6,207 nt of DNA. Source: Selaginella moellendorffii. Lineage: Eukaryota > Plantae > Lycopodiophyta. Where the stretch lies: contig NW_003314700.1 of the NCBI RefSeq assembly GCF_000143415.4, positions 1-6,207 of the forward strand, read 5' to 3'. Made by a program: the position numbers and the translations under genes. Positions 1 through 6,207 of the stretch are shown in pieces. The notes under the pieces are model-generated. The model ran no database searches, was not told the DNA's origin, and saw only the letters and a program-made list of their open reading frames with translations. Every line of letters begins with the position of its first letter. Position 1 is the first letter of the stretch.

Positions 1-722
1 TGTTCTAGCTAATGATAGTTGTTGTACTTGAGATTCAGTGTCCATAAGGTGCAGAGCAAGATTTATCTGTTTTTGATGAGGTTTGCAAGACTCAAAAGAT
101 TAAGCTATGGATTTGAAGGCTTCAAGATGAGTTTGAGAATCTTGCATCATTTATTGATGACTTGACATTCTAGCATTTATATTTTCAATATCACTTTGAA
201 AACAACTTTCTTTATTTTGTGAAGACAGATCCTGATGATCATTTATGGTTGGTGGTGCCTTCAATCTTTATTTCACAGTTTCTCCATACCTACCATAATT
301 TTTCTATTGTAAGCAGGCATATGGGATATCATTATGTGACCGAGAAGTTGCGCAAGTCTTTTTATGGGCCAGAGATATGACATGATGTTATCCGGTATAT
401 GTGTAGCTACATTTGGTGCCAAATTTGTAATACTCCCCCTCATGCTACGGAAGGATGGTTGAAATTAATTGTAATGTCTCATCTATTTGAGTTAGTGGCA
501 TTTGATCTTATAAAACCTTTTCCACAATCAACTACTAGCAATGAGTATTTTATTATTGCTTTTGATTACTTAACTTGTGTAAGCGACTAAATTTTCCATT
601 CTACTTTAGTCACTTAACCACACCTCCGACTACTTGGAGGAGTCTCATTCACAACCTCCATAAGTCCAATTCAGGACTTGGGACTTGCTAGCCCCGAGAA
701 TGGCATCCATGCCACTCAACAT
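1..722 (+). repeat. Direct repeat copy 1 (722 bp; partner 5485-6206)
   Basis: Base-by-base comparison at offset 5484 shows only 4 differences (27 C/T, 70 T/C, 184 T/C, 695 C/T) and no indels. Both window edges truncate the comparison, so the true repeat may be longer. Confidence 0.97.
3..577 (+). pseudogene. Element A: Ty3/Gypsy pol fragment (RH-IN linker, integrase HHCC zinc-binding domain, start of catalytic core), with in-frame stops
   Basis: Frame 3 reads ...FENNFLYF...LWLVVPSIFISQFLHTYHNFSIVSRHMGYHYVTEKLRKSFYGPEI*HDVIRYMCSYIWCQ...LFELVAFDLIKPFPQSTTSNEYFIIAFDYLT. This matches the Gypsy pattern LVVP..H..GHxG..T..L...FYWP.M..DV..YV.SC..CQ...PFExVAxD...P.P.S..GN.YI.V..DYLT. There are five in-frame stops upstream of 399. 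Confidence 0.9.
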
Positions 723-1271
723 TTGCACTTGGTCCAAGTGCTCCACATGTCCGATCCCATGACCGACACTCAAAGGTACCACCGACATGGCAGCTTGTTA
801 CGCTAAGGCCATGCCGAATCACCTTTGCCACACTAGTAGTCCAATACCCCTTGCATCACAGTCTTGGCTCTCCAAGACTAGGCAAACCATCCGTGAGTGG
901 TCATCTCAGATCCACTCCTTAGCATCCTTAGGATGCCCACCGACAAGGGGAATAGCCTTCCCCAATATCCCTCTGTCAGTCCCCACTAAGTCCCTTTCTG
1001 CCCCTGGCCGTGTTTGCCAACACTGCCACTGGATTGAGGCCCACAGGCCCGACCACTAAGTCCCACGGTCCTCTGGGACTTCCTCACCACACGACTGTGT
1101 CCTTGGTCACTACCCCAGAGGACTGCTCCTCTTCCTTTCCACAGTCTGGGCCTTTAGGACAACATTTCGGAACACCGTGGCCTTACGCGAGCCACCTGGG
1201 TACTCTCCCCGCCTTCCGCCCTTAGGTGCTCTAGCCATGGGCTTAGAGCGAGGTTCCGTTGAGCCACGCTT
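578..1271 (+). repeat. Putative 5' LTR of element B (3' boundary uncertain); its first 146 bp recur at 6062-6207
   Basis: Starts TGTAAGCG at the breakpoint. CGCTT at 1267-1271 is the inverted complement of AAGCG and abuts a TGGTATC PBS-like motif. The terminal ACA is missing and no clear TATA box is seen. Confidence 0.4.
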
Positions 1272-1282
1272 GGTATCCAAGT
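1271..1282 (+). promoter_or_regulatory. Degenerate tRNA-iMet primer-binding-site-like motif
   Basis: TGGTATCCAAGT matches 9/12 of the canonical plant PBS TGGTATCAGAGC and lies ~100 bp upstream of the gag remnants. Confidence 0.35.
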
Positions 1283-1443
1283 AGGTAGTGCCACCCACAC
1301 TTGGACTGGGAGCATCGGCCAGTCGATCTCCCGGGGGAACTAGAGCCGGCTCTTGAACACTTCACCAAGCTACCCCGCTTGTCGGTCCGTATTCACTCTA
1401 GTCTTGGACTTCCTAGTGGTCAGTTCATCACCCAACACTGGGT

Positions 1444-1486
1444 CTGGCCTTCCTGGGCCAAACTGGCCTTTCCTGGCCAAACTGGC
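1444..1486 (+). repeat. 19-bp tandem duplication (2.3 copies)
   Basis: CTGGCCTTCCTGGGCCAAA / CTGGCCTTTCCTGGCCAAA / CTGGC. Confidence 0.85.
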
Positions 1487-1578
1487 TCCACTGCAGTCCT
1501 CCCCCTACTATACTTTTGGAGCTCACCAAACCCCCCAAGGTCTGGGAGACGAACGCTTTGGGCTTTCACCCTCTCAGG

Positions 1579-1728
1579 CTCGAACTCGGACTCGGCCTCG
1601 GACTCGGACTCGGACTCGGACTCGGATTCGGACTCGGACTCGGACTCGGCCTTGGCCTTGGTCTCGGTCTCGGTCCCGATCTCGGTCTCGGTCTCGGTCC
1701 CGGTCTCGGTCTTGGTCCCGGTCTCGAC
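1579..1728 (+). repeat. Hexamer microsatellite, 25 units: (CTCGGA)n switching to (CTCGGT)n at ~1651
   Basis: Parsed directly: 12 CTCGGA-type units followed by 13 mostly CTCGGT/CCCGGT/CTTGGT units, all in 6-bp phase. Confidence 0.95.
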
Positions 1729-2072
1729 TTCGGACTCCATCTCGGGTCCATCTCGGACTCCATCTCGGACTCCATCTCGGGTCCATCTCGGGTCCATCTC
1801 GGACTCCATCTCGGACTCCACCTCGGACTCCATCTCGGGTCCTTCTCGGACTCCATCTCGGGTCCATCTCGGACTCCATATCGGACTCTACTTCGGACTC
1901 CACTTCAGATCCATCTCGGACTCCATATCGGACTCCACTTCGGGTCCATTTCGGACTCCATATCGGACTCCACTTCGGACTCCACTTCGGATCCATCTCG
2001 GACTCCATATCGGACTCCATCTCGGACTCCACTTCGGACCCCATATCGGACTACTTCGGGTCCATCTCGGAC
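1729..2072 (+). repeat. Minisatellite of 12-bp CTCGGACTCCAT and 11-bp CTCGGGTCCAT units (29 units plus a partial)
   Basis: Parsed as 19 x 12-mer, 9 x 11-mer and 1 x 10-mer. The distal half contains 47-bp higher-order copies at 1868-1914 and 1950-1996. Confidence 0.95.
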
Positions 2073-2528
2073 ACTTCCACGTGTCATGTGTTGGTCCTTT
2101 TTGGGTCCCTTTTTGGAGCCTTGCTTATTGGTTGCCTCGTGCTTGCTCCTCGAGCACTTTGTTGGGAGTTCCACTCCCGCTCTCGACCTTCCAAGTCGGA
2201 GCTTTTTAGCCCAAATGCGTTATGCTCATTTGGCTTTCGCTTCGGCCACTACCACATGGTGCCCTTCCGGCTCCACTTTGGGGCCTAGGGATTTTATGTC
2301 TCACAACTCCACCACCCATAGACGAAGTTCGATGTCCTCATCGAACGGTAAACCCTTTCATAAAATAACACCCGCACGTGTTACCTTTTCCATCCTTGGC
2401 ACCCAGCCAATATTTGTCTATGGTTTGACACCAAAGGCTCACCATGCCTTGTCCATCCTCTAAGGAGCATAGCCTCTCCAACTTAGAGGCTCATTTGACC
2501 ACTTGTGGTGGTGTTCTCCTTTTATTGG

Positions 2529-2540
2529 TTTTTTTTTTTT
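2529..2540 (+). repeat. T12 homopolymer
   Basis: 12 consecutive T between the zinc-knuckle and protease remnants. Confidence 0.9.
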
Positions 2541-2629
2541 CACTAAACCTGTTAGAGACACCTTCTCCAACCCGATCCCACTACTCGTTCTCGAGTGGTC
2601 TCACTTTCCAGCGCTATAACCCTTGCACT

Positions 2630-5335
2630 TTGGAACTTTTAATCCTGATTTCTTGGAGTCAATTTCCTAAGTGTCTCCGACACCTTGCCTTGCACATTTT
2701 GTGCAACTCCACTTCCCATCCTAGGAAGTTCTCTACTCGAGGGCACCATCATCCTCTCTTCTATTTCGTGCCACCCTGGGGCACTAAGTTCCAGTTATCA
2801 TACTTTGTGCTAAGGCTGTCCATGGCCCTATCTTTTGGCTACTTTGTCGCTCCCTCACCGTGAGCTTTTACTTCGCCAAATTGGAGCATTTAGGAATCCA
2901 TCCTTAGAAGTCCACTTCCTTTCCCACAAGCCGTTAGCATCAAACACATTAATGTTCCTTGGCTAACTTTGCCATTTGGATCCCTTCCATTAAATTCCAT
3001 GGCCGAAACTTGGCCACTAGTCCTTTGTTCCTATCCTTGATTGTTGCACCCAGCAACATAGGATCGCTACCTCCATTTTTGAGGTATCCTTTTGGTTCCA
3101 TAGCAAAGACTCTTCTTTGCCAAGTCCGGAGGATGTTCATCCCTAGTACGTTTCTTTAGCATCTTTTGCTATGAGCTCTATCCACGGCCCAACTTCGTGA
3201 CCCTCCCATGGGTCTCTTATATAGACTACTTTCCTTGGACTCACTATGCCATCGCACGGACATAGTTTATTTCCCTTAGGTGCTCTTCCCACTTGGTCAT
3301 CATGACCAAGCCACACCACTTTAAACAGTTCAATTTCAACATTTTGAACCAGGAACTTCATTCCTTAGCCAACCAAGGACCTTGTCCTTATCTGGCCATA
3401 AGATCACCTAGTGATCTCACCTTGGCACCTTAACAGAGTTGCCAAGAGGTACTTGGTCTTCTAGACCTTCAAATTGTTGACTATAACCCCGGGGGCATCC
3501 CCCACACTTGGCAGTGCACCCAAGCCAGCCCTTATGGCCAAGGGTTCATAGCAACTGAGATTAGGTGTCCCCATCTCACTCACCACGTCCTTGGTGCCAC
3601 TTGCACCAAAGCGTTCAAGTTAGATATGCCGAGCTTTCACACTAAGCAATCTAACCGTGTATCACGACTCCGAGGCATCCTTCGCTTGGCGGTGTGCCCA
3701 AACCAGTCTCCACACTGAGAGTCCATGACCACCAAAATATGAGTGTCCTCATATTCCAAACCATCACCACGCCCTAGTGATTTGGGACTCGAACCCAAAC
3801 ACTAGAGGGTCGGGACTCGAACCCAACCTCCGTATATGCATCTACGGACGGCATCACCCAGGATGCCTGGCGTGACTCGCACCAACTTATACTCAAAGCG
3901 CGCTATAGATCACAGCTTAGGAACCTAGTTCCTCCCCACTGCCAAGTCCTCTCACTTGACAAGCCTGTGATCATGCATGGACTCCTCCATGCTTAGCTCC
4001 ATGGCCCACCCTTTTTGAAGTTATCACCTTCAACTAGGGTATTTGTTCCCCTGACTTGCCAATCTCGCTTTGGCAAGTCCTCCAACCACTGTAACATGGT
4101 TTCTGCACAAGCGTGAAAGCCCTTGATCATCGACTTTCGTTCAAAGCCCTTTCTTTGAACACTCGGGAACTACTTCCCTAACCTTGATAGCCTTGCCTCA
4201 TGGCAAGCTTCAAGACCACGCTTCTGCTGCGCCACTTTGATTTCGCGCGTTCCTTGAACCATTTACATTTGGCCTTTCTAGGTACTAAACTACCTAGAAT
4301 CCTCTTTGGGAACCTTGAAGAAACTCTGTCCCTTAGCTTGCTAAGGCCCCCCTTTCTGCAAGCTTTCCAATTACCATATAGTCTAACATGGACAATTCCA
4401 TATTTTAGACTCTCCATGGCATCACGGTTGCTAGCGGCAACACCCTCGAGCCCCCACTTGATTCTCCACTCCCAACTGGCATAATTAACCTTGGTTATGC
4501 CCTTCGAGTCCTATGGTTCGGTTCTATCCCCTTACTTCTTGCTTTTGGCTTCACACCTTTCCTTCAGTCATTCTCCTCCAGACCAGGAAGATAGCTTTGC
4601 ACTTTCTATCATGCCTTAGCAAGTATTCTTAGGGATGAACTTACCCGATAGCCTAGGGAGTGGTTCCTCAATCCAGGTATGCTCACCCTATAATCCCACA
4701 CACCGGGATTACGTTGTTGCTTATGGGCCTTTGCGTGCCCATCGCTAGCCTTGCCAAAATTCCATTTTTGGCTTTGTCCAATTCAAGTAGACAGTCTTCT
4801 CCTGTCTCTGCCACCTTGGACATTTGGATAGCACCTACTATCCATCATTCGCTAGGAACTTAGTCCCTTGGGCCTTATCTACTACCCTCGCGACATCAAA
4901 CACCACCTCCTGGTGTTCTAGAGTGTTCGGGTGTCCTAATGACGGCTTCCTTGACAATGAGTATTTCCTTTTATGACATTGACTTACTATATCGCTACAT
5001 AAGCAACTTATCTCTCGTAAGGGTATATCCAACTTCCCTATGCCATCAAGAAGGCTTGGGTAGCTACCTTCTACCCGTTTAACCAATTATTTTGCACCTC
5101 TTGCTTAGTTGCCTCGTAGTTGTCAAGTCCTACAACTCATTGCTGGTGCTTCCATACCTCCATCATTATCTGGGTCACCACACTCCCACTGCATGCTCTG
5201 CAATTTAGGCTATGCCATTCCCATTTCTATTGGGATTCCTTTGGCAAGGGGTTCTCATGAACCCACCAACATAGCCTCAAGGTATCACACTTTGGCACAT
5301 TTGGTGTTTCCACACCATTCGCTCCACGAGCTTAC
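2630..5335 (+). pseudogene. pol relic (PR-RT-RH-IN) of element B, multiply frameshifted, truncated in the integrase core
   Basis: Ordered remnants: RPS 3462, LRLGV ~3555, FKLD 3614, YE 3738, CIY-DGI 3837-3855 (YxDD site), KPL 4117, LRHFD 4227-4241, RPG 4580, HAL 4610 (DALS site), LCVP 4729, SPVS-HLG ~4798-4820, DIK 4892, RLT 5076. Spacings (RPS to YxDD ~127 codons, KPL to LxHxD ~37, LxHxD to RPG ~118) fit what I recall for Ty3/Gypsy pol. The protease remnant (~2640-2680) is very weak. Confidence 0.65.
3772..3828. other. Two adjacent hairpins sharing GGGACTCGAACCCAA (reverse complement of a tRNA T-arm / B-box GGTTCGAGTCCC)
   Basis: 15-bp direct repeat at 3784-3798 and 3812-3826. Stems are CTAGTG(A)TTTGGG/CCCAAACACTAG and GGTCGGG/CCCAACC, both with the 7-nt loop ACTCGAA. 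Confidence 0.75.
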
Positions 5336-5344
5336 CTCTATTTG

Positions 5345-6061
5345 GTTAGTTATATTCCTTAGTGGGTTTTAAAGCTTTAAATATATGTTATTCATCACTC
5401 GGGAAGTTTTATGGTTGATGTTGATGCCCTTTCTTTAGCTCCTCTTCTTTTTTCACTCTCTTTTCATATTTTTGATAAGTATGTTGTTCTAGCTAATGAT
5501 AGTTGTTGTATTTGAGATTCAGTGTCCATAAGGTGCAGAGCAAGATTTATCTGCTTTTGATGAGGTTTGCAAGACTCAAAAGATTAAGCTATGGATTTGA
5601 AGGCTTCAAGATGAGTTTGAGAATCTTGCATCATTTATTGATGACTTGACATTCTAGCATTTATATTCTCAATATCACTTTGAAAACAACTTTCTTTATT
5701 TTGTGAAGACAGATCCTGATGATCATTTATGGTTGGTGGTGCCTTCAATCTTTATTTCACAGTTTCTCCATACCTACCATAATTTTTCTATTGTAAGCAG
5801 GCATATGGGATATCATTATGTGACCGAGAAGTTGCGCAAGTCTTTTTATGGGCCAGAGATATGACATGATGTTATCCGGTATATGTGTAGCTACATTTGG
5901 TGCCAAATTTGTAATACTCCCCCTCATGCTACGGAAGGATGGTTGAAATTAATTGTAATGTCTCATCTATTTGAGTTAGTGGCATTTGATCTTATAAAAC
6001 CTTTTCCACAATCAACTACTAGCAATGAGTATTTTATTATTGCTTTTGATTACTTAACTTG
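5345..6061 (+). pseudogene. Element A, longer copy: RNase H C-terminus, linker and integrase N-terminus
   Basis: 5363-5443 reads WVLKL*IYVIHHSGSFMVDVDALSLAP, resembling the RH end RWxLxLQ.Y...I.H.PG..N..ADALSR. About 100 codons later, after a frameshift, the same integrase fragment follows. The RH-then-IN order is the Ty3/Gypsy order. The left edge is approximate. Confidence 0.85.
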
Positions 6062-6206
6062 TGTAAGCGACTAAATTTTCCATTCTACTTTAGTCACTTA
6101 ACCACACCTCCGACTACTTGGAGGAGTCTCATTCACAACCTCCATAAGTCCAATTCAGGACTTGGGACTTGCTAGCCCTGAGAATGGCATCCATGCCACT
6201 CAACAT
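5485..6206 (+). repeat. Direct repeat copy 2
   Basis: About 99.4% identical to 1-722. The identical 63-aa ORF appears at 399-590 and 5883-6074. The last base (6207 G) mismatches 723 T. Confidence 0.97.
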
Positions 6207-6207
6207 G

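What the first reader, a model, noticed from the sequence alone, without database searches (positions are those of the whole stretch)
578..5340. Former gag-pol retroelement remodelled into a near-continuous chain of short stem-loops (candidate structured-RNA non-autonomous element)
Seen: perfect inverted repeats with stems of at least 7 bp and loops of at most 8 nt at 725-741 (8), 860-879 (8), 922-936 (7), 1058-1081 (8), 2327-2346 (8), 2471-2491 (7), 2690-2706 (7), 3103-3120 (7), 3292-3310 (9), 3401-3417 (7), 3591-3609 (7), 3736-3755 (8), 4053-4079 (10), 4139-4160 (8), 4276-4299 (9), 4331-4346 (7), 4691-4711 (7), 4825-4844 (7) and 4899-4917 (7). Dozens of 5-6 bp or bulged stems fill the gaps (e.g. 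580-616, 623-640, 701-714, 2164-2178, 3375-3389, 3918-3932, 3976-3991, 4193-4208, 5249-5264, 5302-5317), often back to back. A rough uniform-composition expectation is 4760 x 8 x 4^-7, about 2-3. The chain begins at the insertion junction, and I saw no comparable stem in element A. Established: LARDs are non-coding LTR elements with structured interiors. Inference: here the structured interior visibly descends from pol, capturing a coding-to-structural transition that may serve packaging, stability or silencing evasion.
Basis: partly seen in the sequence, partly recalled or inferred. Interest (0 to 1): 0.85.

Follow-up and report, generated by a model that had tools for sequence, protein, structure and literature searches.

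The report
Hairpin-packed non-coding plant retrotransposon copy
The stretch is a truncated copy of a very abundant, protein-less LTR retrotransposon (said by earlier scan notes to be from the spikemoss Selaginella) whose body really holds about ten times more short perfect hairpins than chance. It shows no trace of descent from gag-pol, and whether the hairpins are selected RNA structure or a by-product of copying is only partly settled.

Summary
Observation confirmed. All 19 listed perfect stem-loops exist, plus two more: 21 with stems of 7+ bp in 578-5340 against 1.7 in dinucleotide shuffles, and 92 against 30 at 5+ bp. The excess is confined to loops of 3-8 nt and is absent from the host element.

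Interpretation partly supported.
- Block B is a non-coding, LARD-type LTR retrotransposon copy of a family about 100 times more abundant than its host.
- No ORF piece on either strand matches Pfam or Ty3/gypsy polyproteins, so "former gag-pol" is unsupported.
- Anatomy is revised. The sense strand is the window's minus strand. 578-2086 is the 3' LTR, 2087-5340 is the interior, and the 5' part is missing.
- The unit of host pol fragment plus B repeats with a 5484-bp period.

New evidence on cause:
- This copy has lost family hairpins through ordinary transitions.
- Two multi-base differences between copies make perfect palindromes, a template-switch signature.
- Helix ends are extended by G.U only on the sense strand (29 vs 16.8 expected, P=0.001).
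- Hairpins overlap less than random.

Best reading: hairpins made by fold-back copying and kept on the sense RNA. Function is untested, and no RNA was seen in the one sample read.

The scan has found the same phenomenon before on other DNA of this genome.

The parts
1..577 (+). Host: decayed Ty3/gypsy pol fragment (integrase zinc-finger to start of catalytic core), AT-rich, with stops. No hairpin excess.
   Evidence: Pfam Integrase_H2C2 weak hit (E 0.003). tblastn of polyproteins P0001/P0015/P0021 to 189-575 at E 1e-9 to 1e-11, ending at 575. Hairpins at expectation. Fold z about +0.3.
578..2086 (-). 3' LTR of the non-coding element (sense = minus strand). On the + strand it reads TGTAAGCG...ACGTGTCA. 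The 578 end is well supported. The 2086 end is inferred from the TG/CA motif and the adjacent purine tract only.
   Evidence: k-mer depth jumps about 100-fold at 578. Contigs of other copies diverge just before 578 and 6062. Their consensus, reverse-complemented, reads TGGTATCGGAGC / TGGTATTGGAGC, a tRNA-iMet-type primer binding site next to the LTR end (the canonical TGGTATCAGAGC is from my own knowledge). Boundary sequences.
1560..2072 (-). Tandem repeats (6/12/35-nt units, CTCGGA-type) inside the LTR. Copy number varies between copies.
   Evidence: Tandem Repeats Finder rows. Many skip-joints 1759-1870 to 2056-2152 in other copies. The minus strand folds better here (z -3.6 vs -1.1).
2087..2115 (-). 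Polypurine-tract-like run just upstream of the 3' LTR on the sense strand (AAAAAGGGACCCAAAAAGGA, then CCAACACA, then TG of the LTR).
   Evidence: Sequence read on the minus strand. Weak: 8 nt separate the purine run from the LTR.
2087..5340 (-). Non-coding interior: chain of 73 perfect stem-loops of >=5 bp (17 of >=7 bp), covering 34% of the bases. Truncated at 5340.
   Evidence: counts, loop window, reduced overlap. (fold z). (no coding signal). (high depth up to about 5340).
3781..3827 (-). Two adjacent hairpins with the 7-nt loop UUCGAGU on the sense strand: tRNA T-arm / B-box look-alikes (GGTTCGAGTCC twice).
   Evidence: Sequence and fold. No tRNA gene and no Rfam family.
5341..6061 (+). 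Second copy of the host pol fragment, here complete on its left side (RNase H C-terminal 'DALS' motif through integrase). 5485-6061 repeats 1-577.
   Evidence: Direct repeat D3. 5 differences in 723 bp. tblastn 5363-5446 and 5673-6059. Low depth.
6062..6207 (-). Start of the second copy of the LTR (repeats 578-723).
   Evidence: Depth rises again at 5950-6149 and loose ends lie before 6062.

Best explanation
Block B (578-5340) is a 5'-truncated copy, lying on the minus strand, of a very high-copy, protein-less LTR retrotransposon of the LARD type. It consists of a 3' LTR (578-2086) plus about 3.25 kb of interior. It sits in a decayed Ty3/gypsy pol fragment, and the composite has been tandemly duplicated.

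The family's genomic RNA (the window's minus strand) folds into a string of roughly one hundred independent short stem-loops: 5-10 bp stems, 3-8 nt loops, purine-rich linkers.

I think the hairpins are produced by fold-back (hairpin-primed) template switching when the element is copied. Such an event writes a perfect reverse-complement arm in one step. I think they are then retained in the actively copying lineages because local structure in the sense RNA is tolerated or favoured. The most plausible role is recognition and packaging by the helper element's Gag/nucleocapsid, or protection of an untranslated RNA.

Once inserted, copies decay neutrally.

Shown: identity, orientation, hairpin excess, lack of coding signal, neutral loss in this copy, template-switch-like differences between copies, and the sense-strand G.U bias.
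Inferred: reverse transcription as the step that makes the hairpins, selection, and the function.

Separate odds: identity and anatomy about 0.85; template switching as a source of stems about 0.6; some RNA-level selection about 0.5; packaging as the role about 0.25. The overall confidence given is for the combined reading (identity plus template-switch origin plus some retention on the sense RNA).
For: Identity and orientation:
- Depth is about 1e5 across 578-5340 against 6e2-3e3 on the host, with sharp edges.
- A tRNA-iMet-like PBS lies next to the LTR end in other copies.
- The family is also present in a second organism label.
- The LTR has TG...CA ends and a purine tract beside it.
- There is no coding signal.

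Physically folded hairpins:
- Enrichment is limited to loops of 3-8 nt and short range.

A property of the family rather than of this locus:
- Where this copy differs from most copies, its private transitions have destroyed family stems at 2296, 2649, 2670, 2813, 3222 and 3681.
- Variant sites fall in stems as often as stems cover the block (8/40 vs 21%), which is neutral decay after insertion.

Template switching:
- Of the three multi-base differences among the 40 sites shown, two give a perfect palindrome in the rarer state.
- 1270-71 (TT vs CA) completes CTTGG/CCAAG and is shared by 24-39% of copies.
- 2859-61 makes CTCACCGTGAG in this copy only.
- The mechanism is described in PMC5453318 and PMC8794818.

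RNA level, sense strand:
- Helix ends are extended by G.U on the minus strand: 29 vs 16.8 expected from local unpaired composition (P = 0.0013, cores >=4); 20 vs 12.9 (P = 0.024, cores >=5).
- On the plus strand the count is 10 vs 11.7.
- Internal G.U pairs run 5:1 in the same direction.
- The favoured strand is the one that the PBS independently names as sense.
- Hairpins overlap half as often as randomly placed intervals (13 vs 26, P = 0.0015).

Against: - Fold z-scores are the same on both strands of the interior (-1.96 vs -1.80).
- Stems are perfect and end abruptly, and loops share no motif. All three fit a purely mutational origin.
- The G.U signal is modest and rests on one copy. A strand-biased C-to-U mutation in the family's history could mimic it.
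- The overlap test ignores the combinatorial difficulty of overlapping perfect palindromes.
- No RNA from B was seen in the one RNA-seq run read. Of 9.2 million records read, 232 were laid, nearly all partial matches to the tandem repeat that run on into other sequence.
- No covariation test was possible: only 40 of 213 variant sites were shown and no other full copy could be fetched.
- The 2859-61 cluster includes a central change that a simple template switch does not explain.
- The LTR's inner boundary (2086) and the PPT are weakly supported.
Confidence: 0.45

Rival explanations
1. Pure copying by-product. Hairpin-primed template switching by the helper's reverse transcriptase, or by DNA polymerases, keeps converting weak quasi-palindromes into perfect ones. 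A non-coding interior has no reading frame to protect, so they pile up. The hairpins have no function.
For: - Perfect Watson-Crick stems with abrupt ends and no loop motif.
- Identical fold z on both strands.
- Two arm-copying multi-base differences between copies.
- The LTR also carries an excess: 4 vs 0.5 at >=7 bp in 578-1559.
- The mechanism is documented (PMC8794818).
Against: - G.U extension of helices on the sense strand only.
- Fewer overlapping hairpins than random.
- A sharp upper loop limit of 8 nt.
- Point-mutation decay is visible in this copy, so a tenfold excess needs a very high creation rate or retention.
Confidence: 0.3
2. One reading: a former gag-pol element whose coding region was remodelled into structure, so that the hairpin chain descends from pol.
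For: Only the size of the interior and its position between LTR-type ends. There is one weak, chance-level tblastn link at 5208-5351 (21 bits).
Against: - No significant Pfam hit for 20 stop-free pieces on both strands.
- No significant tblastn hit of four Ty3/gypsy polyproteins anywhere in B, while the same queries find the 0.7-kb host fragment easily.
- No protein relatives of B ORFs.
Confidence: 0.05
3. A DNA-level or antisense role: palindromes serving as protein-binding sites or cruciforms, or hairpins acting in a plus-strand (antisense) transcript.
For: - Palindromes are strand-symmetric by nature.
- Plus-strand linkers are pyrimidine-rich and G-poor (8.5% G in loops). That would give very clean isolated hairpins in a plus-strand RNA.
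Against: - Zero-gap and 1-nt-gap palindromes, typical of dimer binding sites, are not enriched.
- Every hairpin has a different sequence.
- The G.U bias favours the minus strand.
- No plus- or minus-strand RNA was seen.
Confidence: 0.05

Closest known systems
LARDs (large retrotransposon derivatives, e.g. Sukkula of barley; Kalendar et al. 2004, cited in PMC7215508)
   Same: Long LTRs. A multi-kilobase internal domain with no gag/pol. High copy number. Presumed dependence on a helper element. An internal domain said to specify conserved RNA secondary structure.
   Different: Here the structure takes the form of about 100 unrelated short perfect hairpins with 3-8 nt loops, tenfold above chance. 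I know of no description of this form for LARDs. The host is a lycophyte according to earlier scan notes, which I did not verify. This copy is truncated and has only one LTR.
Template-switch mutations / quasi-palindrome correction (Loytynoja and Goldman 2017, PMC5453318; Monttinen and Loytynoja 2022, PMC8794818)
   Same: Multi-base changes confined to one arm that turn an imperfect inverted repeat into a perfect one (1270-71, 2859-61). Short spacers. Perfect stems created in one step.
   Different: Those papers describe rare events in cellular DNA replication. Here the density would require a far higher rate, plausibly from reverse transcription, which was not shown.
Retroviral and retrotransposon packaging (psi) stem-loops bound by nucleocapsid
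   Same: Short stem-loops in the genomic sense RNA with exposed purines. A non-autonomous RNA must be recognised by a helper's Gag.
   Different: Psi signals are a few specific conserved hairpins near the 5' end. Here the hairpins are many, all different, and spread over the whole interior and the LTR. No binding or packaging evidence exists.
Nested and tandemly arrayed LTR retroelements (e.g. Cassandra arrays, PMC7215508)
   Same: A retroelement-derived unit repeated head to tail (period 5484 bp, 0.7% divergence).
   Different: The unit here is a composite of a host pol fragment and a truncated guest element, not LTR-internal-LTR. Only 1.13 units are visible.

Membership tests
LARD-type non-autonomous LTR retrotransposon | Two long terminal repeats with TG...CA ends | tested here: inconclusive
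   Only one LTR (578-2086, TG...CA on both strands) lies in this truncated copy. No internal direct repeat pair was found. The LTR nature of 578 onward is supported by the depth step and the diverging flanks in other copies.
LARD-type non-autonomous LTR retrotransposon | Primer binding site after the 5' LTR and a polypurine tract before the 3' LTR | tested here: met
   PBS: absent from the window, but present beside the LTR end in other copies (loose-end consensus). PPT: a purine run at 2087-2115 on the minus strand, 8 nt from the LTR, which is weak.
LARD-type non-autonomous LTR retrotransposon | No protein-coding capacity in a long internal domain | tested here: met
   No ORF longer than 110 aa outside the tandem repeat. 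No significant Pfam hit. No tblastn hit to polyproteins. No protein relatives.
LARD-type non-autonomous LTR retrotransposon | Internal domain with conserved RNA secondary structure | tested here: inconclusive
   Strong predicted structure. Family stems can be inferred at sites where this copy has mutated. Conservation or covariation across aligned copies could not be tested.
LARD-type non-autonomous LTR retrotransposon | Mobilised in trans by an autonomous partner | not testable with these tools
   No partner identified. The host fragment A is only the insertion site.
Ty3/gypsy pol-derived sequence (claimed for block B) | Detectable RT, RNase H or integrase similarity, collinear on one strand | tested here: not met
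   The same searches detect the 0.7-kb host fragment.
Template-switch mutation | A cluster of adjacent changes whose derived state is the reverse complement of nearby sequence | tested here: met
   1270-71: fully met. 2859-61: two of the three changed bases fit, the central base does not. Polarity was inferred from frequency among copies, not from a tree.
Structured functional RNA (sense strand) | Strand-specific G.U pairs and compensatory changes | tested here: inconclusive
   The G.U excess at helix ends is on the sense strand only (P 0.001-0.03). There is no strand difference in fold z. Compensatory changes could not be tested.

The most novel reading that the evidence does not exclude
A protein-less retroelement whose RNA has evolved into a 'string of beads' of about 100 unrelated mini-hairpins through a self-reinforcing ratchet. 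Hairpin-primed template switching by the helper's reverse transcriptase writes perfect stems. Selection on the sense RNA keeps them because a dense array of stem-loops with exposed purines captures the helper's nucleocapsid better than the helper's own RNA. This would explain the family's roughly 100-fold numerical dominance.
Probability: 0.2. Interest if true: 0.7.

Novelty: new variant of a known kind. Interest (0 to 1): 0.5.

Why it matters
How parasitic, protein-less retroelements out-compete their helpers is poorly understood. So is how perfect RNA stems arise at all. A family with thousands of young copies, in which about a hundred independent hairpins can be followed through gain and loss, would be a natural experiment. 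It could separate mutational creation of stems (template switching) from their retention by selection. It could also test whether generic hairpin density, rather than a specific packaging signal, can drive packaging. If the hairpins are only a copying by-product, the family still gives a rare direct read-out of the error spectrum of a plant retrotransposon's reverse transcription.

Tried and rejected
- Composition or k-mer vocabulary as the cause: rejected. Dinucleotide shuffles do not reproduce the counts, there is no excess of inverted words beyond 20 nt, and direct repeats show none.
- Descent from pol: rejected on present evidence.
- Known RNA families or tRNA genes: none.
- Internal diverged duplicates, to test stem conservation within the copy: none outside the tandem repeat.
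- Fetching other copies through ORF products: three homology searches and two exact look-ups were blank. Two exact-pattern scans of metagenome contigs were blank. A findings look-up by sequence was also blank.
- Using the best polyprotein hits as same-genome controls: their loci (L001, L002) come from an unrelated large eukaryotic genome, so I did not use them further.
- Arm-orientation bias: G-C, C-G, A-U and U-A counts are about equal at 147, 135, 134 and 122, so nothing can be learned about the direction of switching.
- Indels between copies: 4 of 12 lie in loops. This is suggestive only.
- Assembly wrap-around of a circle as the reason for the 5484-bp period: unlikely, because the two copies differ at 5 of 723 sites.
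- Bacterial promoter/terminator scan: not informative for a plant element.
Copies were compared site by site only.

Full report
**1. The observation**

It also returns two more inside 578-5340, at 3975-3992 and 4753-4772. Outside that block there is one in the host fragment (182-202) and one at 5368-5381.

Against 200 dinucleotide-preserving shuffles the block holds:
- 21 such hairpins where 1.7 +- 1.4 are expected; no shuffle reaches 21
- 9 vs 0.37 at 8 bp or more
- 44 vs 7.3 at 6 bp or more
- 92 vs 29.8 at 5 bp or more

The host fragment 1-577 is at expectation.

The excess is not a vocabulary effect:
- Inverted 6-mers are enriched 7-16 fold at gaps of 3-8 nt, about 6 fold at 9-12, and not at all beyond 20 nt.
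- Direct repeats are not enriched.
- For stems of 5 bp or more, only loops of 3-8 nt are enriched (3-6 fold). Loops of 0-1 nt and of 9 nt or more are at expectation.

This loop window means that a physically folded small hairpin is involved, either as the thing selected or as the mutational intermediate.

Thermodynamic folding agrees:
- 120-nt windows have mean z of -1.96 (plus strand) and -1.80 (minus strand) in 2087-5340. They are about +0.3 in the host.
- The tool's own fold of 3961-4300 (minus strand) gives z = -8.15. A host piece of the same length gives -0.06.

**2. What the block is**

The window is 1.13 copies of a 5484-bp period. Positions 1-723 equal 5485-6207 with 5 differences.

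The unit has two parts.

(a) A 721-bp AT-rich piece of Ty3/gypsy pol (5341-5484 continuing into 1-577):
- It runs from the RNase H C-terminal 'DALS' motif through the integrase zinc finger to the start of the catalytic core.
- It has a weak Pfam Integrase_H2C2 hit.
- tblastn with four polyproteins gives E 1e-9 to 1e-11, and the matches stop at 575.

(b) Block B, 578-5340. Laying public reads and contigs on 150-6149 shows:
- B belongs to a hugely abundant family. Summed k-mer depth is 45,000-885,000 per bin across 578-5349, against about 590-3,050 on the host bins. The steps are sharp at 578, about 5340 and 6062.
- The family is also present under a second organism label (run X4).
- Contigs of other copies diverge immediately before 578 and before 6062. 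Their low-agreement consensus, reverse-complemented, reads ...CA + 1-3 nt + TGGTATCGGAGC (or TGGTATTGGAGC). That is a primer binding site of the initiator-Met tRNA type; the canonical plant TGGTATCAGAGC is from my own knowledge.

Three things follow:
- Position 578 is the outer end of an LTR.
- The element's sense strand is the window's minus strand.
- The LTR in the window is the 3' LTR.

Read on the minus strand, a purine run (AAAAAGGGACCCAAAAAGGA) lies 8 nt upstream of TGACACGTGG at 2086. I take 2086 as the LTR start, which gives an LTR of 578-2086 with TG...CA ends. This inner boundary is the weakest part of the anatomy.

The LTR contains a 0.5-kb tandem array (1560-2072) whose length varies among copies. 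The window has no PBS and no second LTR. B is therefore a copy that lacks its 5' LTR, its PBS and the beginning of its interior.

The sequence to the right of B is host pol that lies upstream of the sequence to its left. B is therefore not a simple insertion flanked by contiguous host. The simplest account has two steps:
- insertion of the element into the host integrase;
- a tandem duplication of the segment running from the host RNase H end to position 5340 of the guest.

The 0.7% divergence between the two copies argues against an assembly wrap-around.

**3. Coding capacity and the claimed pol ancestry**

- Outside the tandem repeat, the longest stop-free stretch on the sense strand is 110 codons.
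- Twenty stop-free pieces from both strands gave no Pfam family at E <= 0.1. One piece has a sub-threshold DUF3097_N match at E 0.17, well under the curated cut-off.
- The polyproteins that find the 0.7-kb host fragment find nothing significant in the 4.8 kb of B. The best are E 0.026-0.1, with short low-scoring segments on the antisense strand.
- Three searches of the large protein collection with B ORFs were blank.
- No Rfam family and no tRNA gene was found.

The element is non-coding. Nothing here shows that it descends from pol.

**4. Where the hairpins come from**

I compared the window with other copies site by site, using the 40 best-supported differing sites and 12 indels that one search prints. 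I built no consensus.

*Pattern of differences.* Of 173 places tallied by kind of change, 144 are transitions. Changes where the window has T or A and the others have C or G are the commonest (55 and 33), as expected from deamination of methylated cytosines in a silenced copy.

*Neutral decay after insertion.* Eight of the 40 sites fall in the window's perfect stems, the same share as stems occupy in B (21%). So the inserted copy evolves neutrally. At six sites where almost all other copies carry another letter (2296, 2649, 2670, 2813, 3222, 3681), that letter would complete a stem of 5-7 bp that the window has lost or shortened. The active lineage of the family was therefore even richer in hairpins than this copy. 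The hairpins were not made at this locus.

*Template-switch signature.* Three multi-base differences are among the 40 sites, and two of them create a perfect palindrome in the rarer state:
- At 1270-71 the window, together with 24-39% of copies, has TT where the rest have CA. This completes CTTGG/CCAAG.
- At 2859-61 the window alone has CGT for TTG. This turns a 5-bp stem with a 7-nt loop (2849-2865) into the palindrome CTCACCGTGAG.

Adjacent changes confined to one arm that make it the exact complement of the other arm are the signature of template-switch, or quasi-palindrome-correction, mutations (PMC5453318; PMC8794818). The second case is only a partial fit, because its central base also changed.

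**5. Is there selection on RNA?**

Arguments for:
- *G.U at helix ends.* With the sense strand fixed independently by the PBS, helices are extended by G.U at their ends on the sense strand. Counts are 29 vs 16.8 expected from the local unpaired composition (P = 0.0013, cores of 4 bp or more), 20 vs 12.9 (P = 0.024, cores >=5) and 13 vs 7.7 (P = 0.03, cores >=6). On the antisense strand the count is 10 vs 11.7.
- *Internal G.U.* G.U pairs flanked by Watson-Crick pairs run 5:1 in the same direction.
- *Longer helices.* Counting helices that allow G.U gives 21 of 8 or more pairs on the sense strand against 10 on the antisense strand. Much of that difference follows from the purine-rich composition of the linkers.
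- *No matching mutational asymmetry after insertion.* The 55:33 split of the window's transitions roughly tracks the C and G content of the plus strand, so post-insertion mutation does not obviously explain the bias.
- *Compatibility.* Hairpins overlap one another half as often as randomly placed intervals (13 vs 26 pairs, P = 0.0015).

Arguments against:
- Fold z-scores are equal on the two strands.
- Stems are perfect and end abruptly; only 8 of 92 continue after a mismatch.
- Loops share no motif.
- No RNA from B was detected in the one RNA-seq run read. 232 reads were laid, 228 of them partial matches to the tandem repeat that continue into other sequence. Depth elsewhere was at most 0.3.

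My reading is that template switching supplies the stems and that some retention on the sense RNA is more likely than not. This is suggestive, not shown.

**6. Comparison with what is known**

Non-coding LTR elements with long LTRs and a multi-kilobase internal domain are known as LARDs. They are said to specify conserved RNA secondary structure (PMC7215508, citing Kalendar et al. 2004). This family fits that description in:
- size;
- lack of coding capacity;
- PBS and PPT;
- abundance.

The defining pair of LTRs and the conservation of structure could not be tested on this truncated single copy.

What appears new, as far as my searches of the literature show, is the form of the structure: about a hundred unrelated, short, perfect hairpins with a narrow loop window, tenfold above chance.

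Earlier notes of this scan describe the same phenomenon on other pieces of this genome, which they attribute to Selaginella moellendorffii. These are s1-337345, s1-361211, s1-410694, s1-374824 and s1-394655. I did not verify the organism. Those notes left 'selection or copying error' open for lack of other copies.

This report adds:
- the read-based comparison with other copies;
- the orientation;
- the loop window;
- the neutral loss in the inserted copy;
- the template-switch-like differences;
- the strand-specific G.U bias.

**7. Verdict**

It is a new variant of a known kind, of moderate interest.

Noticed in passing
window 1-723 and 5485-6207: The whole window is periodic with a 5484-bp unit (host pol fragment plus truncated guest element). 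The two copies differ at 5 of 723 sites, so this is a real, fairly recent tandem duplication or part of a longer array rather than a wrap-around.
   Followed up: partly
window 3781-3827, minus strand: Two neighbouring hairpins with the loop UUCGAGU and the core GGTTCGAGTCC: look-alikes of a tRNA T-arm or Pol III B-box on the sense RNA. No tRNA gene or Rfam hit. Earlier scan notes report the same module in an autonomous chromovirus 3' UTR.
   Followed up: partly
window 1350-1950: RNA-seq reads match the LTR's tandem repeat only in part and run on into other sequence (for example ...GTGCACCATGTCGGGGTCGGA before 1752/1798). An expressed gene elsewhere shares this repeat motif.
   Followed up: no
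window 4053-4079 and 578: In one 2.6-kb contig of run X20 the LTR end is joined, through two bases, to position 4061 inside the 10-bp hairpin. This gives a shorter derivative whose post-LTR sequence starts TGGCAAGTC. It is either a deletion at a hairpin or an alternative primer site.
   Followed up: no
window 2410-2460: Several contigs of two organism labels show 'go-back' joints (2450-2460 to 2410-2420 with 1-14 extra letters). This means a 30-40-bp local duplication is present in other copies.
   Followed up: no
window 578-5340: Differences from other copies are 83% transitions, mostly window T/A against family C/G. This fits cytosine-methylation-driven decay of a silenced copy.
   Followed up: partly
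window 578-5340, plus strand: Strong strand asymmetry (C 31.6%, T 28.7%, A 20.8%, G 18.9%). Hairpin loops contain only 8.5% G on the plus strand, so on the sense RNA cytosines sit mainly in stems and loops are G/A-rich.
   Followed up: partly
window 378-380 and 5862-5864: The host integrase zinc-finger region carries an in-frame stop in both copies, so the host element was already dead before the duplication.
   Followed up: no
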